Sequence record: NC_061447.1
DNA: 64,000 nucleotides
Reading direction: 5' to 3' (one strand)
In this document: one piece after another, positions 12,012 to 19,824 of the stretch
Layout: the number at the start of each line of letters is the position of its first letter
Position numbering within the stretch: the first letter of the stretch is position 1
The notes under the pieces: model-generated
The model's input: only the letters and a program-made list of their open reading frames with translations
Databases searched by the model: none
What the model was told of the DNA's origin: nothing
Translations under genes and position numbers: made by a program

Positions 12012-14531
12012 ATGGCTAAAGCGAAACGAATCAAGGCTGAAAAAGAAGCCGAAGGTAAAACCAAAGCCAAGAAAGGTAAAGCAGTCGCAGCCGATGATGT
12101 TGGCGGCGTAGAAGTCATGGGCTTTGACCTGGCTAGTTTGATGGACGATGTTCTTGATGGCATCGAAAAGAAAACGAAAGTAAGTTCGCAGGATGCAGCG
12201 CGTCACGCACCTCGTATCTCAACAGGCTGTCTCGCACTCGACATGTTCCTGTCTGGTGGCATTGTCCCTGGTGGCTGGTACACGTTTAGCGGCGGTGAGC
12301 AGTCGTGTAAGTCAACAATGACCATGAGTATTATGGCGAGCCTGATTCGTCTGCATTACTCTGGCATTAGCGTAGTGTTTGACTACGAAGGTTCAACCGA
12401 CGCAGAGTACGTTGCTGGTCAGTTGAAAACGTTCGGCGTTCGCGTTGACCCGAAAACTATCTTCGGTGTGCGTGATGACGAAGACGGTAGCTGGATCGTT
12501 AAGCCTAAGATCCGTTACTATGCCCCAGACAACGGTGAGCGCTTCTTCGATTATATGTCGATGCTGCGTCGTCGTCTGCCAGACAAGATCGTTGAGAAAG
12601 ACGGTACCGCGTATTACATCTTTGAGAACAACAAAGAGAACGCGAAGAAGCTGGCTGGTAAGTACGACAAGAAATGGTTTAGCCGTAACAACCAGTTCAA
12701 AGTACCTGCGCCAGACGGTCACATGCAGGCTATGGTTATCGTTGACTCCTATCCTGCAATGATGCCAGATCAGGTCGATGATGACGAAGGCTCGAAAGCA
12801 ATGGCGCTGCAAGCGCGTATGTTCTCTGACGGCATCAAACGTTTCCGTGGTGGTATGCGCCGTAAGATGATGACCATCGTTGGTGTTAACCAGTTGCGTC
12901 AGAAGCCTGCTGTTATGTTCGGTAGCCCTGAGTATGAGCCAGGTGGTGATGCGTTGAAGTTCTACTGCTTCGACCGCGATACTCTGATTCGTACTGATCA
13001 CGGCGTGCTGACTGCACCTCAGATCAAAGAGCTGATCGATGCTGGCAAGGAAGTCATGGTCGAATCGTTCGACGGCTTCCAGAAGATCAATGGCGCGTGG
13101 AAAGTTGATGACGCTCCGTTCCCAATCGAACTGAACGCTGGTGGACATGCGTATGTTGGTAGCGCTGAACACCGTCAGTTCACCTTCATGTATGACACGA
13201 CTGCTGATGGTATGGCTGTGCTGCGTCCTGAGTGGAACACGCTCAACCAGCTTGCTCAATATCCAGAGCAGAAAGGCCAGTATGCAGGTCTGCGTGTACC
13301 ACCTGTGAAAGAACTGAAAGCGAACGTGCCTGATGCGTTTGATGAAGCAAGCCAGCTCGTTAGCAATCTACTTGGCAACGCTGACTTCGTAAGCGTACAA
13401 CTGCCTCTGGCTGTTGCTGGTGATACCACGTTTGCTGCGAACGTACTGACTACCAATATGATTGGTGATCAGGATGATGTTCACACGTTCTCTTTGTGGG
13501 CACGTCACCTACTGTCTATCGGTATCTATGCTTACGCCGATGAAAGCGGTCTGCATATCCCAGGTCTGAACTATCACGAACTGCAAGCGGCTGTAACTCA
13601 GGATGAACTCGGTGCATTTGCTGGTATCAGCTTCGAAGCCACCAGCCGTCAACGTCAGACTCAGATGCTGACTGTGATTGCAGACGTGTTCCCTGAACTG
13701 ACCCGCTACGTGCTGGACTATCAGTTGCAGACAGGCCAGGATAAAATCTATCTGGCGCCAGAGCAGGACTTCGCACAGGCTCTCGACCTGATTCTGCATA
13801 AGCAGATTGAAGGTTACGATGACCAGTACGACCTGCTGATGCAGCAACTGGCGTACATCGACGACTGGTATAACTTCGATAACTCTATCGTTCCTGTTCC
13901 GTTCACGCTGAAAGCTCTGGTCAATCCTGTGGAGTTCTGGGATGTGAACGTCGAAGAAACGTCTGTTGTGATCACTAACGGTTTCGTTAGTCACAACTCT
14001 GACGTGCGTGTTCGTCTGGCTTCTCGTGCTGTGCCTCAGGGCTGGCCGACAATGAAAGACGCACCGGGTATCGTTGGTGAGAAGTCTGTAACTGTTGAAG
14101 GTGGTACCGACCGCTACCGTTTCATTGCAGCCAAGACCATCAAGAACAAGATGGGCGGCATCCCTAACCAGCAGACTTGGTTACGTCTGTGGGAAGCTGA
14201 CGGCAACGGTGAAGCGCGTGGCTTCGACCCAGTGTTCGATACGTGGCATTACCTGAAAACTCTCGGCCTGATCAACGGCACTCGTAAGAGCTTCAAGATC
14301 AAGGCGCCATGCCCGCTCGCATCTGACGTTAAGATGGACTGGGATGACTTCCGTACTCTTATCAACGGCAGCAAAGAGCAAGTTGTTGGCGTGTGTAAGA
14401 AACTGAAAGTCAAACCTGCTGGCCTGCGTCTGTGGTGCTTCAAGTTCGTGCAGTCTACCAAAGGCAACGAGATGTTGAAGAACGCTATCAGTAAGTCTGC
14501 GAAGACTTCTGATGACGATGACGACGAGTAA
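12012..14531 (+). CDS. recA: RecA/UvsX-like recombinase precursor containing an intein
   Basis: GGEQSCKST Walker A variant, VIVDS Walker B, QARMFS, VNQLRQK, GGDALKFY/SDVRV RecA motifs. Confidence 0.93.
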   Translation: MAKAKRIKAEKEAEGKTKAKKGKAVAADDVGGVEVMGFDLASLMDDVLDGIEKKTKVSSQDAARHAPRISTGCLALDMFLSGGIVPGGWYTFSGGEQSCKSTMTMSIMASLIRLHYSGISVVFDYEGSTDAEYVAGQLKTFGVRVDPKTIFGVRDDEDGSWIVKPKIRYYAPDNGERFFDYMSMLRRRLPDKIVEKDGTAYYIFENNKENAKKLAGKYDKKWFSRNNQFKVPAPDGHMQAMVIVDSYPAMMPDQVDDDEGSKAMALQARMFSDGIKRFRGGMRRKMMTIVGVNQLRQKPAVMFGSPEYEPGGDALKFYCFDRDTLIRTDHGVLTAPQIKELIDAGKEVMVESFDGFQKINGAWKVDDAPFPIELNAGGHAYVGSAEHRQFTFMYDTTADGMAVLRPEWNTLNQLAQYPEQKGQYAGLRVPPVKELKANVPDAFDEASQLVSNLLGNADFVSVQLPLAVAGDTTFAANVLTTNMIGDQDDVHTFSLWARHLLSIGIYAYADESGLHIPGLNYHELQAAVTQDELGAFAGISFEATSRQRQTQMLTVIADVFPELTRYVLDYQLQTGQDKIYLAPEQDFAQALDLILHKQIEGYDDQYDLLMQQLAYIDDWYNFDNSIVPVPFTLKALVNPVEFWDVNVEETSVVITNGFVSHNSDVRVRLASRAVPQGWPTMKDAPGIVGEKSVTVEGGTDRYRFIAAKTIKNKMGGIPNQQTWLRLWEADGNGEARGFDPVFDTWHYLKTLGLINGTRKSFKIKAPCPLASDVKMDWDDFRTLINGSKEQVVGVCKKLKVKPAGLRLWCFKFVQSTKGNEMLKNAISKSAKTSDDDDDE
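12966..13997 (+). mobile_element. intein (344 aa) in RecA with degenerate LAGLIDADG-like core
   Basis: Begins CFDRDTLIRT (block A) right after LKFY; SAEHRQF (block B-like); ends WDVNVEETSVVITNGFVSHN followed by Ser+1; removal restores LKFY-SDVRVRL. Confidence 0.92.
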
Positions 14532-14580: not shown

Positions 14581-15009
14581 ATGCGTACTCAAATCTATAC
14601 TGCTGATATCCTTAATCTGGAAACAGTGACAGTCAACGAAGAAGACGGTAGTGAGGTTCGTACACCAACTATCGTGCCTAACGTTGAAGGCGAACCTGAG
14701 TTCAATGTCGATACAGTCTATTCTCTGTTGCAGTCAGCACTGCCAGAAGAGTCTGCTCCTGATACACGCCGAATCGTATTGGTAACTCTTGATTTGGTGG
14801 CAGGCTTCTCTACCAACGGCCTGGAAAACTTCTTCGACCCTATCGCTCGCGTCGAAGATATCACTGCTGGTAACGTCGGCAGCATTCTCGGCCTACAGGT
14901 TGTCGTCAATGACAAGTCTGTTGCGCCATGCCTTGCAGTGGCAAACGTTAGCGATGTTGAAGAGGGTGTCACAATTCTCTCATACAGCGCGGCCCGCGTA
15001 AAACTGTAA
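14581..15009 (+). CDS. hypothetical protein
   Basis: GAGGAG RBS. Confidence 0.8.
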   Translation: MRTQIYTADILNLETVTVNEEDGSEVRTPTIVPNVEGEPEFNVDTVYSLLQSALPEESAPDTRRIVLVTLDLVAGFSTNGLENFFDPIARVEDITAGNVGSILGLQVVVNDKSVAPCLAVANVSDVEEGVTILSYSAARVKL

Positions 15010-15109
15010 ACCAATAGTGGGAGGCATCCCTCCCACATTCTCTCGCTTGATAGGCTATCCGCCACAAGCAAACAACTTAACTCGATAGGCTATGCGCCAG
15101 GAGTGTTTT

Positions 15110-15820
15110 ATGAAAAAGATTCAGACTAACATCTTACCAACCGAAGCTCTGCACGGACTTATTCACGGATTTTTCCATCAGGCAAAATCTCCTGAACATC
15201 CATCTGATAGTTCACGGAGTTTGATCTATATTGATGTTACCGACACTAGTGCTAGAAACGCATTGTACGCGATACTGAAACGCGAGCCTTCTAGCTATAC
15301 GCATCCAGTTGCCTATGATCGCGTTGGTGACGTGCGTGGCTTTACCGCACCTCGCCATCTTCCTGTAGTTCTGTCTGCGAACTTAGCACATGTGGATAAA
15401 CCAACACTGGCAAGCTCTCTTGCTGGTATTTTTAGCGCTCTTTCTCACACCGTACATAAATACGATACACAAATAACTATCTACGGTGAACCCCAGATTG
15501 AGAAACTTCTGTCTGACGTTCGAAATATTCAGTTTAAGGACTTCTTGGAAGTATGTACACCAGAACTCGCTTGCGGTGACTTCGATCTAAAATCCAACAT
15601 CACCGTAGACAACTTTGTGTCTATTGCGATCGATCCAGAGTTCGCACAGCGTATTCCGGAAAGCCCAGGTACGACCTACACGTTCGGCCGTGACTTCATG
15701 TTCATGCACTATGAAGATCTGCACAAAGTCATTCAGATCCTGCGTAAATATAAGAAGAACTGCACCTTGCATCCAGACTTGATGCGCTACTACTTCATGA
15801 ACGTAATCTGTAAATATTGA
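15110..15820 (+). CDS. hypothetical protein (possible distant paralog of 16983)
   Basis: AGGAG RBS before ATG 15110. Confidence 0.75.
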   Translation: MKKIQTNILPTEALHGLIHGFFHQAKSPEHPSDSSRSLIYIDVTDTSARNALYAILKREPSSYTHPVAYDRVGDVRGFTAPRHLPVVLSANLAHVDKPTLASSLAGIFSALSHTVHKYDTQITIYGEPQIEKLLSDVRNIQFKDFLEVCTPELACGDFDLKSNITVDNFVSIAIDPEFAQRIPESPGTTYTFGRDFMFMHYEDLHKVIQILRKYKKNCTLHPDLMRYYFMNVICKY

Positions 15821-15868
15821 TCACCAACCGAACACAAATGCTGTGTGTAGTCTAGCCCGACTTGGGCA

Positions 15869-15899
15869 GGGGAGAGCCTGATGGCCTCCCCATTTTTTT
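15869..15899 (+). terminator. intrinsic terminator just upstream of AcrVA2-like gene RBS
   Basis: GGGGAG..GCC-TGAT-GGCCTCCCC + 7 T. Confidence 0.75.
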
Positions 15900-15913
15900 G
15901 TCTGGGAGTTTCT

Positions 15914-16936
15914 ATGTCTGAAAAAGCAACATTCGTCCAAGTACATGAGGCATACCTACAGGAGTCCGCCTCTCGTGGTGCAGCACGATCAAAGATAACC
16001 GATCACTTCACTAAGTACCTGAAAAACAAGAACGGTAAACTCCCTTCCCTCGGAATCCCTATGGAAGAGTTTGTTCGTTGGGCTAATATGATTCCAACGG
16101 AGATCAATCCTGACATAGCACGTCAGCTAATGTTTATTTCGTCAGCGACCTATACGCATTACGTTTGGTCTTTTACGAAAGCATCGTTTGTGATTGAGAA
16201 AGAACTGTGGCCGCATCTGATTGAGGGTGATGCACCTAAAGTGCTGCCGACCTCTACGCTGCGTCAATTACCTCACTGGTCGCAGTGGATCAATTGTGTG
16301 TTCACACTCGACTACAAACATGCCGCGACCGGTAACAAATACGAAATTGATATTGAAGGGTTCTGGGCAACATACGTTAACTACCAAGAGGCAACTCACC
16401 TGAGCTTGTCCTGCTTCGGTGTGTATAATGATGGCACAGGCAATCAAGTAATGTCGCTCTATATCATATTTGACATTACCAAAGACATGGAACTGTCTGA
16501 TGGTTTCGATTGGTTCATGCACCTTGTAGGCGCTAACGGCGCGACTGGTGTTGACAGTAATTCTGACAACGGCCCTGAGATCACTGGAGCTGTCATGGCT
16601 CTCATGAAGCCTGTCGTTAACGTGCTGCTGTTCGTTGCATCACAGGTAGACAATATCTATAAAGGAGGAATCAAATCACTCAAACCTAGACGTAGCGGTA
16701 ACAGTTACAAAATCATTCCTGTTCGTGATGTTCGTGAGTGGAATGTGGGTACAGAGTTGCTTAATGAAATTCGTACCTATGAAAGCGAAGTGAAATCTCA
16801 TGAATCTAATGGTCGTCGTGCGCATATACGCAGAGGCCATCATCATAGTTATTGGTACGGACCTTTAAAGGGTGAGCGTGAATTAAAGTCACGCTGGGTA
16901 CCACCATGTGTTGTTCGTGGCACTATCGCAGAATAA
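15914..16936 (+). CDS. AcrVA2/FinQ-family protein
   Basis: Collinear motifs with AcrVA2 as recalled: W..T, LP.S...LP.W, I.GFWA.Y, LL......I.YKG, G..L..E.R.Y.S, HIRRGH.H.YW.G, RW.P..V. Confidence 0.7.
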   Translation: MSEKATFVQVHEAYLQESASRGAARSKITDHFTKYLKNKNGKLPSLGIPMEEFVRWANMIPTEINPDIARQLMFISSATYTHYVWSFTKASFVIEKELWPHLIEGDAPKVLPTSTLRQLPHWSQWINCVFTLDYKHAATGNKYEIDIEGFWATYVNYQEATHLSLSCFGVYNDGTGNQVMSLYIIFDITKDMELSDGFDWFMHLVGANGATGVDSNSDNGPEITGAVMALMKPVVNVLLFVASQVDNIYKGGIKSLKPRRSGNSYKIIPVRDVREWNVGTELLNEIRTYESEVKSHESNGRRAHIRRGHHHSYWYGPLKGERELKSRWVPPCVVRGTIAE

Positions 16937-18183: not shown

Positions 18184-19824
18184 ATGTCTTTGATTAAGAT
18201 TGAAGGTGTTGCATCCACCTCCGCTCCAACGCGAGCGCAGAAAGATGCTGCTGAATTTCTGTTTGGCTCTAAGGGCCACGCAATCGTTGCCGTGCTCGAC
18301 AAATTCAGTCGTGCCAAAGAACTGCGTTCTGCACACCTTGATGGTCTGCTCAAGCTGATGAAAGAAGGCGAAGATGATGATATCATCAAATTCGGTGCTT
18401 CTGCTTTGGGCAAGAAAACCATCCAGAATGCCAAAGCGTTTGCTGTTGCGAAAACTTTGACTGCTTCTATCAAGGCACTGAAACTGATTCGCGTTCCTGT
18501 TAAGTGGATCGAAGGTCACTCTGATGTGGCTGCTGCTCGCGTACAGGAAACCAAAGAGGTTCGCGCACGTCGTACTGCTGGGAACAAAGTTGAGAAGCCG
18601 ATTAAGCTCGACAACCCAGGCGCACCTGAAGCTACTACCGTAGATAACAAAGTTATTGATCCGAAGAAGGGATCTGCGACGCCAGCCACAGATGAAGTGA
18701 GTGTAATTTCAAGCACGTCATACAACAAGTCTATTGGCGTTAACTCTATTGTAATTCGACGCTTCTTCCGTGGCCATGAAGTCACCAGCTCTCTGATGTT
18801 CAGAAAAGGTGTAGGTGAGCAAGCGACTCAACTCGGACTTTCCTCTCACGGTAACGGCCATGAGCAAGGTGCTGGTCTGTTGGTTGAAGCGTTCAAAGCA
18901 ACTGGCGTCAAGCCTGTTTGGTATCTGGCTGATGCTGGCGATGCTGCGTTCGATCTGGGTTCTGCTGCAAACGTGGCGAAAGTGTTTAAGTGGCTGCGAG
19001 CACGAAAAGTCGGTATGACCTTTGACGCAAAAGCGAAACTGCCTAAGTCCGGCAAAGTTCCAGCAGGCGCCTCTCGAATTGTTCGAAACGATATCGGTAA
19101 GCAGAAGACTGCAACGGCAGACGAAATCAATAAAATGACCTTTGAATTTGTTAAGAGCAAAAACACAGGCAAAGATTCCGTAGAGCTAAGTTTCAAACAA
19201 CCTTCGAACGGTCATGAGTGGTCACTGAACCTGTCACGTCAAGGCGATTCTATTGCGAGCGATCATGACGGTACATCTGGCTATCAGACGGCAGAATCAT
19301 TCCTGCAGCGTGGCGTCACTGCCATTGGTGGTACCCTTGTTTGGGAGCACCAACAGCCAGGTAGCGCGAGCTTCAAATTCGCAAGCGAAGATCAGGCCAA
19401 ACAGTTTATGGCCTGGGCCAAGAAGCAGAAAGCCCAAACCATCAACTTCAAGACTGAGCCAAAACTCACAGTCGCTAAGAGCGCAGGATATACGCCGTCA
19501 GGCAAATCTGATGTGACGCTGGTGGATGAACTGGCAGAAGTTACCGCACGTAAGATCGCTGCAAAGCCATTGCAGGCGCGTGAAGAATATTTCAATGCGC
19601 TGCGTAATACTCTGCACTCTAACCTGCGTAACTCTGTGGTTAACACAACGTCCGATGGTGTTACCGTTGCACTTGGTAGCAAGCTGTACACGATCCGCCT
19701 GTCAGATAACGCGTGGACTATTCAGACTGGCGCTACTGGTAAGCAGAAAAAAGTCGGTGCAACGTTCGATATCGTTGACCTGCTGGGTATGATGGACAAG
19801 AGCATTCTGCGTCCTAAAGCATAA
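18184..19824 (+). CDS. K/A-rich multi-domain protein, possibly virion-internal
   Basis: 546 aa, own terminators on both sides; no recognised domain. Confidence 0.7.
   Translation: MSLIKIEGVASTSAPTRAQKDAAEFLFGSKGHAIVAVLDKFSRAKELRSAHLDGLLKLMKEGEDDDIIKFGASALGKKTIQNAKAFAVAKTLTASIKALKLIRVPVKWIEGHSDVAAARVQETKEVRARRTAGNKVEKPIKLDNPGAPEATTVDNKVIDPKKGSATPATDEVSVISSTSYNKSIGVNSIVIRRFFRGHEVTSSLMFRKGVGEQATQLGLSSHGNGHEQGAGLLVEAFKATGVKPVWYLADAGDAAFDLGSAANVAKVFKWLRARKVGMTFDAKAKLPKSGKVPAGASRIVRNDIGKQKTATADEINKMTFEFVKSKNTGKDSVELSFKQPSNGHEWSLNLSRQGDSIASDHDGTSGYQTAESFLQRGVTAIGGTLVWEHQQPGSASFKFASEDQAKQFMAWAKKQKAQTINFKTEPKLTVAKSAGYTPSGKSDVTLVDELAEVTARKIAAKPLQAREEYFNALRNTLHSNLRNSVVNTTSDGVTVALGSKLYTIRLSDNAWTIQTGATGKQKKVGATFDIVDLLGMMDKSILRPKA

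What the first reader, a model, noticed from the sequence alone, without database searches (positions are those of the whole stretch)
15914..16936. Full-length AcrVA2/FinQ-family protein in an enterobacterial lytic jumbo phage
Seen: 340-aa protein with WSFTKASF, LPTSTLRQLPHW, IEGFWATY, LLFVASQVDNIYKG, VGTELLNEIRTYES, RAHIRRGHHHSYWYG and RWVPPCVV. These are collinear with my recollection of Moraxella AcrVA2 (WRNTLGIY, TPTSIFLNLPDW, IKGFWAIY, LLWLC...ITYKG, IGERLGSEVRRYQS, RPHIRRGHWHGYWQG, RWQPAVFV). Known: AcrVA2 recognises the nascent Cas12a N-terminus and triggers degradation of its mRNA; FinQ inhibits F-plasmid transfer-gene expression. Inference: Cas12a is uncommon in enterobacteria, so this homologue may silence a different host defence or conjugation protein co-translationally, an undescribed target.
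Basis: partly seen in the sequence, partly recalled or inferred. Interest (0 to 1): 0.85.

Follow-up and report, generated by a model that had tools for sequence, protein, structure and literature searches.

The report
AcrVA2-like gene in Erwinia jumbo phage
An unannotated gene of a 263-kb Erwinia phage encodes a full-length relative of AcrVA2 and FinQ, proteins that silence one chosen gene while it is being translated; the family is already published, including its presence in big phages whose hosts lack Cas12a, but here the gene sits in a fixed slot where sister phages carry very different versions.

Summary
Window 15914-16936 (+) is an intact 340-aa ORF, gp246 of Erwinia phage pEa_SNUABM_33 (Alexandravirus, 263 kb), deposited as 'hypothetical protein'.

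It belongs to the AcrVA2/FinQ family:
- PDB sequence search returns only AcrVA2 (E 2.3e-9; family profile E 2e-49).
- Foldseek returns only AcrVA2 structures (E 3e-9).
- hhalign to an E. coli protein named finQ gives probability 98.9%.
- Every residue that matters strongly in AcrVA2 mutagenesis is kept (W85, H304, R306, H309).

It is also not new: Marino et al. described about 1,800 orthologues, including megaphage ones, mostly without Cas12a.

What I add:
- The gene is present at one syntenic slot in every related Erwinia/Dickeya jumbo phage examined.
- It occurs there as discrete allele classes of 26-56% identity.
- These are exchanged as an ORF-sized cassette (about 15900-16894) between flanks that stay 78-94% identical in DNA.
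- The C-terminal module is conserved, while the N-terminal and central parts diverge.
- Within a class, selection is purifying.

Verdict: new member of a known kind, of moderate interest.

The parts
15826..15899 (+). Conserved non-coding block directly 5' of the gene. It contains a single-copy motif (15837-15853), a small hairpin (15855-15867), and a terminator-like hairpin (15869-15891) followed by a T-run (15893-15899). It forms the left edge of the exchangeable cassette.
   Evidence: Its core motif is kept in 9 of 13 syntenic loci whatever allele follows. The motif occurs once in the 64-kb window. The hairpin is predicted by folding. There is no Rfam family and no sigma-70-like promoter. 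Its role is unresolved.
15904..15908 (+). Shine-Dalgarno sequence GGGAG, 5 nt before the ATG
   Evidence: Read directly from the sequence.
15914..16936 (+). CDS gp246: AcrVA2/FinQ-family protein, 340 aa plus stop
   Evidence: It is the only family member in the window.
15914..16588 (+). Variable part, aa 1-225: N-terminal helices, the W85/P120 box, and the central beta-sheet. This is the inferred target-reading part.
   Evidence: Mean identity among the nine allele classes is 21% (aa 1-70), 35% (71-130) and 17% (131-225). Secondary structure comes from the model. The assigned role is an inference from AcrVA2.
16739..16933 (+). Conserved C-terminal module, aa 276-340, including H304-I-R306-R-G-H309 (nt 16823-16840) and W328. 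By homology this is the ribosome-associating effector part.
   Evidence: It is the most conserved region, at 50% among allele classes. H304, R306, H309 and W328 are invariant in 54 of 54 diverse family members. The H-x-R-x-x-H motif is present in 153 of 154 representatives. The AcrVA2 equivalents H286, R288 and H291 are needed for activity. The C-terminal part of AcrVA2 associates with ribosomes.
15900..16894 (+). Exchangeable allele cassette: the RBS plus codons 1-327
   Evidence: DNA homology to AD1, pEa_1, Alexandra and pEa_3 stops at about 15899-15916 and resumes at exactly 16895. The flanks stay 78-94% identical. GC content is 45.3% in the cassette against 48.0-48.5% in the flanks.

Best explanation
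gp246 is a full-length, functional member of the AcrVA2/FinQ family (Pfam PF26125 'AcrVA2-like').

By homology it most likely works as a target-specific, translation-coupled gene silencer. The conserved C-terminal module (aa about 276-340, with H304-x-R306-x-x-H309 and W328) would place the protein on translating ribosomes and engage a host RNase. The divergent N-terminal and central parts would recognise the first residues of one particular nascent protein, whose mRNA is then destroyed.

The target is not Cas12a, because the host has none. It is most likely a host (Erwinia/Dickeya) defence protein.

Sister phages keep the gene at one fixed slot but swap ORF-sized alleles of very different sequence. 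I read these alleles as different target specificities.

Shown here: family membership, conservation of the key residues, the pattern of regional conservation, the cassette exchange, and purifying selection. Inferred: ribosome association, mRNA decay, and the nature of the target.
For: - Membership: PDB phmmer returns only AcrVA2 (E 2.3e-9) and the family profile gives E 2e-49. Foldseek returns only 7ci1/7ci2 (E 3e-9, probability 1.00). hhalign to 'protein finQ' of E. coli gives probability 98.9% and E 2.9e-17. Relatives of 46-96% identity carry PF26125 'AcrVA2-like'.
- Key residues: W85, H304, R306 and H309 align with AcrVA2 W79, H286, R288 and H291. All four are invariant in 54 of 54 members, and their mutation inactivates AcrVA2.
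- Mechanistic template: AcrVA2 binds the nascent Cas12a N-terminus, its C-terminal part associates with ribosomes and polysomes, and it recruits a cellular enzyme for mRNA decay.
- Modular conservation fits that template: the C-terminal 65 aa are 50% identical among allele classes, against 17-21% for the N-terminal and central parts.
- The gene is functional: dN/dS is 0.06-0.10 within its allele class, like its neighbours at 0.07-0.12.
- Arms-race-like locus: AD1 is 98% (UvsX), 95% (gp247) and 99% (gp248) identical in the neighbours but only 30% in this gene, and the cassette edges are sharp. At least seven allele classes occur in phages of the same host species, and five of them come from the same kind of sample (Korean stream water).
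- The host has type I-E CRISPR only.
Against: - There are no functional data for this protein or for any jumbo-phage member.
- The AcrVA2 D89 equivalent is Glu here. This is a conservative change; the column is D in 32 and E in 9 of 54 members.
- The C-terminal motif region is modelled with low confidence (pLDDT below 50 at aa 304-325 and 330-335), and global TM-scores to AcrVA2 are only 0.44-0.49.
- The gene is present in every relative examined. That is unusual for accessory anti-defence genes and could point to a core phage function.
- No sign of positive selection was seen among close alleles.
- The neighbouring genes give no clue to function.
- Nothing identifies the target.
Confidence: 0.5

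Rival explanations
1. A FinQ-like competition factor between mobile elements. It uses the same translation-coupled silencing chemistry, but the target is a protein of a co-resident plasmid, a prophage or a competing phage rather than a host defence protein.
For: [quoted passage not shown] Many allele classes co-circulate in phages from the same host and the same kind of sample, so co-infection is plausible. It is in fact implied by the cassette exchange.
Against: The protein is no closer to FinQ than to AcrVA2: hhalign identity is 28% and confined to aa 82-339. tblastn against 72,556 plasmids found one weak hit and no finQ plasmid. A phage of a lineage used for lysis of its host has little obvious need to block conjugation. 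No target is identified.
Confidence: 0.2
2. A core phage regulator or host-takeover factor. The ribosome-associating module would be used to shut down a broad set of host mRNAs, or to time the phage's own gene expression, rather than to disarm one defence protein.
For: The gene is present at the same slot in all 48 Erwinia and 3 Dickeya jumbo-phage records that matched. It sits in a replication/recombination gene block with a sigma factor, SSB and UvsX. A conserved leader with a terminator-like hairpin immediately precedes it, suggesting controlled expression. Selection is purifying.
Against: A conserved core function does not predict alleles of 26-56% identity exchanged as cassettes between near-identical backbones. 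AcrVA2 is highly specific in transcriptome data. The variable parts are those that read the target in the template.
Confidence: 0.15
3. A genuine anti-Cas12a anti-CRISPR, kept for hosts that do carry type V-A systems.
For: It is homologous to the only characterised anti-CRISPR of the family. AcrVA2 tolerates divergent Cas12a orthologues because it reads a short conserved N-terminal motif.
Against: The recorded hosts are E. amylovora and Dickeya solani, and E. amylovora has type I-E CRISPR only. Identity to AcrVA2 in the structural alignment is 16%. Most family members occur without Cas12a. Multiple divergent alleles against a single conserved motif would be unexpected.
Confidence: 0.03

Closest known systems
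AcrVA2 (Moraxella bovoculi prophage; PDB 7CI1/7CI2)
   Same: Similar length (340 against 322 aa). It has the same fold and is the only significant PDB match. The equivalents of W79, H286, R288 and H291 are conserved. The C-terminal region is flexible or of low confidence in the model here; a paper on a Shewanella phage homologue describes C-terminal flexibility.
   Different: Only about 16% identity in the structural alignment. The first 70 aa are not alignable by sequence. It is encoded by a 263-kb phage of a lineage used as a lytic biocontrol agent, not by a prophage. The host lacks Cas12a, and there is no AcrVA1-like partner next to it. The target is unknown.
FinQ (fertility inhibition protein of IncI-type plasmids such as R820a, and enterobacterial homologues named 'protein finQ')
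   Same: Same family: hhalign probability 98.9% and E 2.9e-17 over aa 82-339. The finQ cluster representative P0099 is hit by the Erwinia-phage profile at E 5.6e-15. Both occur in Enterobacterales without Cas12a.
   Different: FinQ is carried on plasmids rather than phages. The N-terminal 80 aa are unrelated. Direct tblastn against plasmids does not recover it.
Megaphage ORFs 142, 248, 85 and 178, aligned with AcrVA2 and FinQ in Marino et al., Extended Data Fig. 11
   Same: They are AcrVA2-family proteins of very large phages, retain the H-x-R motif, and have hosts without Cas12a.
   Different: They come from a different phage lineage (metagenomic megaphages). Erwinia and Dickeya jumbo phages were not found in the stored part of that paper's homologue table, which was cut on storage. 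No fixed variable locus was described there.
ORF43 of Shewanella phage vB_SbaS_Y11, reported as a 'putative anti-CRISPR AcrVA2'
   Same: A phage-encoded family member in a gammaproteobacterial setting in which the paper found a type I-E system, in a Shewanella genome.
   Different: It is a 63-kb siphovirus. Its function is likewise untested.

Membership tests
AcrVA2/FinQ family (Pfam PF26125 'AcrVA2-like') | Significant sequence similarity to AcrVA2 over nearly its whole length | tested here: met
   phmmer E 2.3e-9, query 72-335 against chain 67-317 of 323. A family profile containing the query gives E 2e-49 over chain 8-319.
AcrVA2/FinQ family (Pfam PF26125 'AcrVA2-like') | Same three-dimensional fold as the AcrVA2 crystal structure | tested here: met
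   AF2 model with pLDDT 75 and pTM 0.77. The top three Foldseek PDB hits are 7ci2_A, 7ci1_B and 7ci1_A (E 3e-9 to 2.5e-8, probability 1.00), and the next hit has E 0.04. Caveat: TM-scores are 0.44-0.49 and the alignment used for modelling was shallow (7 sequences).
AcrVA2/FinQ family (Pfam PF26125 'AcrVA2-like') | C-terminal H-x-R-x-x-H motif (AcrVA2 H286, R288, H291; needed for activity) | tested here: met
   H304, R306 and H309 align with it. They are invariant in 54 of 54 members. The motif is present in 153 of 154 representatives.
AcrVA2/FinQ family (Pfam PF26125 'AcrVA2-like') | N-proximal conserved Trp (AcrVA2 W79) and acidic residue (D89) | tested here: met
   W85 is invariant in 54 of 54. 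Position 95 is Glu here, and that column is D in 32 and E in 9 of 54.
AcrVA2/FinQ family (Pfam PF26125 'AcrVA2-like') | Score above threshold against the Pfam PF26125 model | tested here: inconclusive
   The local Pfam-A copy returned no such model for the query or its relatives. Precomputed hits to PF26125 are on record for relatives of 96%, 56%, 51% and 46% identity, and the family is named 'AcrVA2-like'. The query itself was not scored.
AcrVA2/FinQ family (Pfam PF26125 'AcrVA2-like') | Significant similarity to FinQ | tested here: met
   hhalign against P0155 ('protein finQ [Escherichia coli]') gives probability 98.9% and E 2.9e-17.
Type V-A anti-CRISPR (functional class) | Inhibits Cas12a in a host that carries Cas12a | not testable with these tools
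   The literature gives type I-E only for E. amylovora. No Cas12a survey of the hosts was run here.
Translation-coupled mRNA silencers (AcrVA2 mechanism) | Association with ribosomes, binding of a nascent N-terminal peptide, and loss of the target mRNA | not testable with these tools
   Known for AcrVA2 only. Here it is inferred from conserved residues and modular conservation.
Fertility inhibition (FinQ function) | Lowers expression of conjugative transfer genes | not testable with these tools
   No data. The known FinQ function comes from the literature.

The most novel reading that the evidence does not exclude
The Erwinia/Dickeya jumbo phages (Alexandravirus, Sasquatchvirus, Yoloswagvirus, Rivsvirus and relatives) maintain one dedicated slot into which ORF-sized AcrVA2-family alleles are recombined. 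The alleles share a constant ribosome-docking C-terminus, and each has its own nascent-peptide reader that silences a different host defence or competitor protein. That would make the locus a natural library of re-targetable co-translational gene silencers in near-isogenic phage backgrounds.
Probability: 0.3. Interest if true: 0.7.

Novelty: new member of a known kind. Interest (0 to 1): 0.42.

Why it matters
Only one member of this large family has a known target, namely Cas12a for AcrVA2. The census here found 2,083 clusters at 50% identity. What the other members silence is an open question already posed in the literature.

This phage group offers a convenient descriptive handle on that question:
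- Several very different alleles sit at the same position.
- They are embedded in otherwise closely related genomes.
- The phages all grow on the same cultivable host species.

Comparing infections by existing isolates could therefore show which transcripts each allele removes.

Practically, about 50 deposited jumbo-phage records call this gene 'hypothetical protein' and could be re-annotated. Phages of this group are candidates for fire-blight biocontrol, so knowing their counter-defence content is useful.

Tried and rejected
- Family libraries: the local Pfam-A, NCBIfam and PADLOC gave nothing for the protein. NCBIfam gave nothing even for proteins that NCBI names finQ/AcrVA2 family, so those negatives carry no weight. 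PHROGs places it in phrog_6160, of unknown function.
- Word-indexed homologue search: it returned only 5-6 close relatives in three tries. This limited the alignment for structure prediction to 7 sequences.
- Direct tblastn against plasmids: one weak Nitrosomonas hit and no finQ plasmid. The FinQ link needed a profile.
- Positive selection among close alleles: not found. dN/dS is 0.05-0.16 in every region. Divergence between classes is therefore attributed to allele replacement, not to fast point substitution.
- Alternative start at ATG 15881: rejected, because it lies in the hairpin, has no RBS, and is not shared by relatives.
- Upstream conserved motif as a general phage promoter: rejected, because it occurs once in 64 kb. 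There is no sigma-70-like promoter and no Rfam family. Covariation is too thin to claim more than the hairpin.
- Neighbours gp244, gp245, gp247, gp248 and gp249: no family or PDB match, so no guilt by association.
- Foreign origin of the cassette: only a small GC difference (45.3% against about 48%), which is not decisive.

Full report
**1. The observation**

Window 15914-16936 (+) is an intact ORF of 340 codons plus stop. The window is 100% identical to Erwinia phage pEa_SNUABM_33 (NC_061447.1, 263,237 bp, genus Alexandravirus, host Erwinia amylovora). Window position equals record position minus 186,000. The ORF is the deposited CDS MPK70_gp246 / YP_010302028.1, 'hypothetical protein'.

The start at 15914 has a GGGAG ribosome-binding site at 15904-15908 and matches the starts of relatives. 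The longer ORF from 15881 begins inside a hairpin and is rejected. It is the only family member in the window.

**2. What it is**

- A sequence search of all PDB chains returns AcrVA2 (7ci1/7ci2) as the only significant match: E 2.3e-9, query 72-335 against chain 67-317 of 323.
- A profile of the query plus 53 diverse relatives hits AcrVA2 at E 2e-49 across chain residues 8-319.
- An AlphaFold2 model (pLDDT 75, pTM 0.77) finds the three AcrVA2 chains as its only significant PDB matches in Foldseek (E 3e-9 to 2.5e-8, probability 1.00; next hit E 0.04). TM-scores of 0.44-0.49 show that domain orientation, or the shallow 7-sequence alignment, limits the global fit.
- An exhaustive HMMER census finds 2,083 clusters at 50% identity with E<=1e-3. 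Of these, 403 reach E<=1e-10 and only 8 reach E<=1e-30. Most of the 150 best are 310-360 aa long.
- One representative, P0099 (E 5.6e-15), stands for a cluster whose members NCBI names 'protein finQ' and 'AcrVA2 family anti-CRISPR protein'. hhalign of the Erwinia-phage profile against an E. coli finQ protein gives probability 98.9% and E 2.9e-17.
- Relatives of 46-96% identity carry precomputed hits to Pfam PF26125, which names 'AcrVA2-like'.
- The local Pfam, NCBIfam and PADLOC libraries returned nothing. NCBIfam also returned nothing for finQ proteins themselves, so these negatives carry no weight.

**3. Key residues**

In AcrVA2, mutation of H286, R288 or H291 abolishes activity, and mutation of W79 or D89 weakens it. 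In the pairwise alignment these correspond to H304, R306, H309, W85 and E95 of gp246.

Across 54 diverse family members, W85, P120, G279, H304, R306, H309 and W328 are invariant. Position 95 is D in 32 and E in 9 of 54. The H-x-R-x-x-H motif is present in 153 of 154 representatives, at a median of 41 residues from the C-terminus.

**4. Mechanistic template from the literature**

- AcrVA2 recognises the nascent N-terminal polypeptide of Cas12a and causes translation-dependent loss of its mRNA, independently of promoter and codon usage.
- A 2026 review of the later work states that the C-terminal part of AcrVA2 associates with ribosomes and polysomes. It also states that AcrVA2 does not cut the RNA itself but recruits a cellular enzyme.
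- FinQ lowers mRNA levels of F transfer genes by an undetermined mechanism.
- The same paper reports about 1,800 orthologues on plasmids and megaphages, mostly without Cas12a, and proposes other targets.
- E. amylovora has a type I-E system and a remnant I-F array.

**5. What the surroundings add**

tblastn against 50,697 phage records finds the protein in 64 records: 48 Erwinia, 3 Dickeya, and 13 Klebsiella- or Serratia-named. Every listed record is a jumbo phage of 254-307 kb with one copy. In the Erwinia phages and Dickeya phage AD1 whose loci I fetched, the gene sits at the same syntenic place after SSB and the UvsX-like gene. In Dickeya phage JA13 and Klebsiella phage FBKp24 it lies in a different neighbourhood.

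Identity to gp246 falls into discrete classes: 90-100%, 56%, 45%, 42%, 37%, 32% and about 30%. These classes do not follow the phage backbone. The table gives amino-acid identity to pEa_SNUABM_33:

| Phage (genus) | UvsX-like | gp247 | gp248 | gp246 (this gene) |
|---|---|---|---|---|
| Dickeya phage AD1 (Alexandravirus) | 98% | 95% | 99% | 30% |
| Erwinia phage Y3 (Sasquatchvirus) | 79% | 53% | 78% | 56% |

At the DNA level, homology to AD1, pEa_1, Alexandra and pEa_3 stops at about 15899-15916. That is just after the T-run of the upstream hairpin and just before or at the start codon. Homology resumes at exactly 16895, 14 codons before the stop. The flanks are 78-94% identical. The exchanged unit is therefore the ORF itself.

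The neighbouring genes gp244, gp245 and the middle of gp249 are also mosaic. gp245 is absent from pEa_3 and from some metagenomic contigs.

Five allele classes come from phages isolated from Korean stream water on E. amylovora.

**6. Where the alleles differ**

Mean pairwise identity among nine allele classes, by region:

| Region (aa) | Identity |
|---|---|
| 1-70 | 21% |
| 71-130 | 35% |
| 131-225 | 17% |
| 226-275 | 31% |
| 276-340 | 50% |

Even between close alleles, the replacements fall mostly in aa 1-70 and 131-225.

Within the pEa_33 class the gene is under purifying selection (dN/dS 0.10 against pEa_17 and 0.06 against phB78). Its neighbours are similar at 0.07-0.12. The gene is therefore functional, and the large differences between classes reflect replacement by old, divergent alleles rather than rapid substitution.

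This pattern, a constant C-terminal module with variable N-terminal and central parts, is what the AcrVA2 template predicts for a family with one effector mechanism and many specificities. It remains an inference.

**7. Upstream element**

A block of about 75 nt (15826-15899) directly 5' of the gene has its core motif in 9 of 13 syntenic loci, whatever allele follows. It is present even where gp245 is missing. It contains:

- a motif that occurs once in the 64-kb window (15837-15853);
- a small hairpin (15855-15867);
- a terminator-like hairpin with a T-run (15869-15899).

There is no sigma-70-like promoter and no Rfam family, and only one compensatory pair. It may be the terminator of the preceding gene and a recombination anchor, or a leader that gates expression. 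This is unresolved.

**8. Distribution beyond this clade**

- 322 IMG/VR contigs encode relatives. Most of the 80 best are 8-140 kb, so the family is not specific to jumbo phages.
- BFVD fold matches include Erwinia phages Yoloswag and RisingSun and Dickeya phage JA13.
- A contig binned as 'Raoultibacter sp.' has the same RecA-like / 141-aa / 237-aa / AcrVA2-like gene order, so it is a phage fragment.

**9. Verdict**

Family membership is secure (about 0.97). The AcrVA2-type mechanism is likely but untested (about 0.6). A non-Cas12a host defence target is the best guess (about 0.4 of the total). The rivals are a competitor-element target, a core regulatory or takeover role, and true anti-Cas12a activity, which is unlikely.

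Against the literature this is a new, unannotated member of a known family. The fixed-slot cassette exchange is an additional descriptive observation of moderate interest.

The short peptide strings used to locate a FinQ-like representative were copied from the paper supplement shown, not from memory.

Noticed in passing
window 12012-14531 (+), insert at 12966-13997: The UvsX/RecA-like gene gp243 encodes 839 aa. It contains a 344-aa insert (aa 319-662) that starts with Cys and ends with His-Asn followed by Ser, splitting a RecA-type '...ALKFY | S...' motif. This looks like an intein. Pfam matched RecA in two stretches and found no intein or endonuclease domain. The pEa_SNUABM_17 homologue is larger still, at 3,576 bp.
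   Followed up: partly
window 14581-15820 (+) (gp244, gp245) and 18652-19485 (middle of gp249): Further mosaic segments lie beside the AcrVA2-like cassette. Across same-genus phages gp244 is 48-83% identical and gp245 is 30-73% identical. gp245 is absent from pEa_SNUABM_3. The middle of gp249 has no DNA match in AD1. None has a family or PDB match.
   Followed up: partly
window 15826-15899 (+): A conserved, single-copy non-coding block with a terminator-like hairpin lies immediately before the gene. Its core motif is kept in 9 of 13 loci, across genera and allele classes. Its function is unresolved.
   Followed up: partly
L094 (GCA_036638175.1, JAVWLC010000071.1, 9,239 bp): A contig deposited as a 'Raoultibacter sp.' MAG has the gene order of these jumbo phages and encodes an AcrVA2-like allele 51% identical to gp246. 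It is most likely a phage fragment that was mis-binned.
   Followed up: partly
BFVD entry A0A223LH45 (Erwinia phage vB_EamM_RisingSun): A protein annotated 'putative mycothiosynthase' matches the gp246 model (Foldseek E 9e-11, probability 1.00). It is probably a mis-named AcrVA2-family member in a second, unrelated lineage of Erwinia jumbo phages.
   Followed up: no
L011:4848-6472 (Dickeya phage JA13): In JA13 the AcrVA2-like gene overlaps by 4 nt the start of a gene annotated as a (p)ppGpp synthetase/hydrolase. This is a different neighbourhood from the Alexandravirus slot.
   Followed up: no
L061-L066, L073, L083, L084, L091, L092 (IMG/VR contigs of 77-144 kb): In a set of IMG/VR contigs of 77-144 kb, a distant family member (about 24% identity) lies within 1-2 kb of a contig end.
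   Followed up: no
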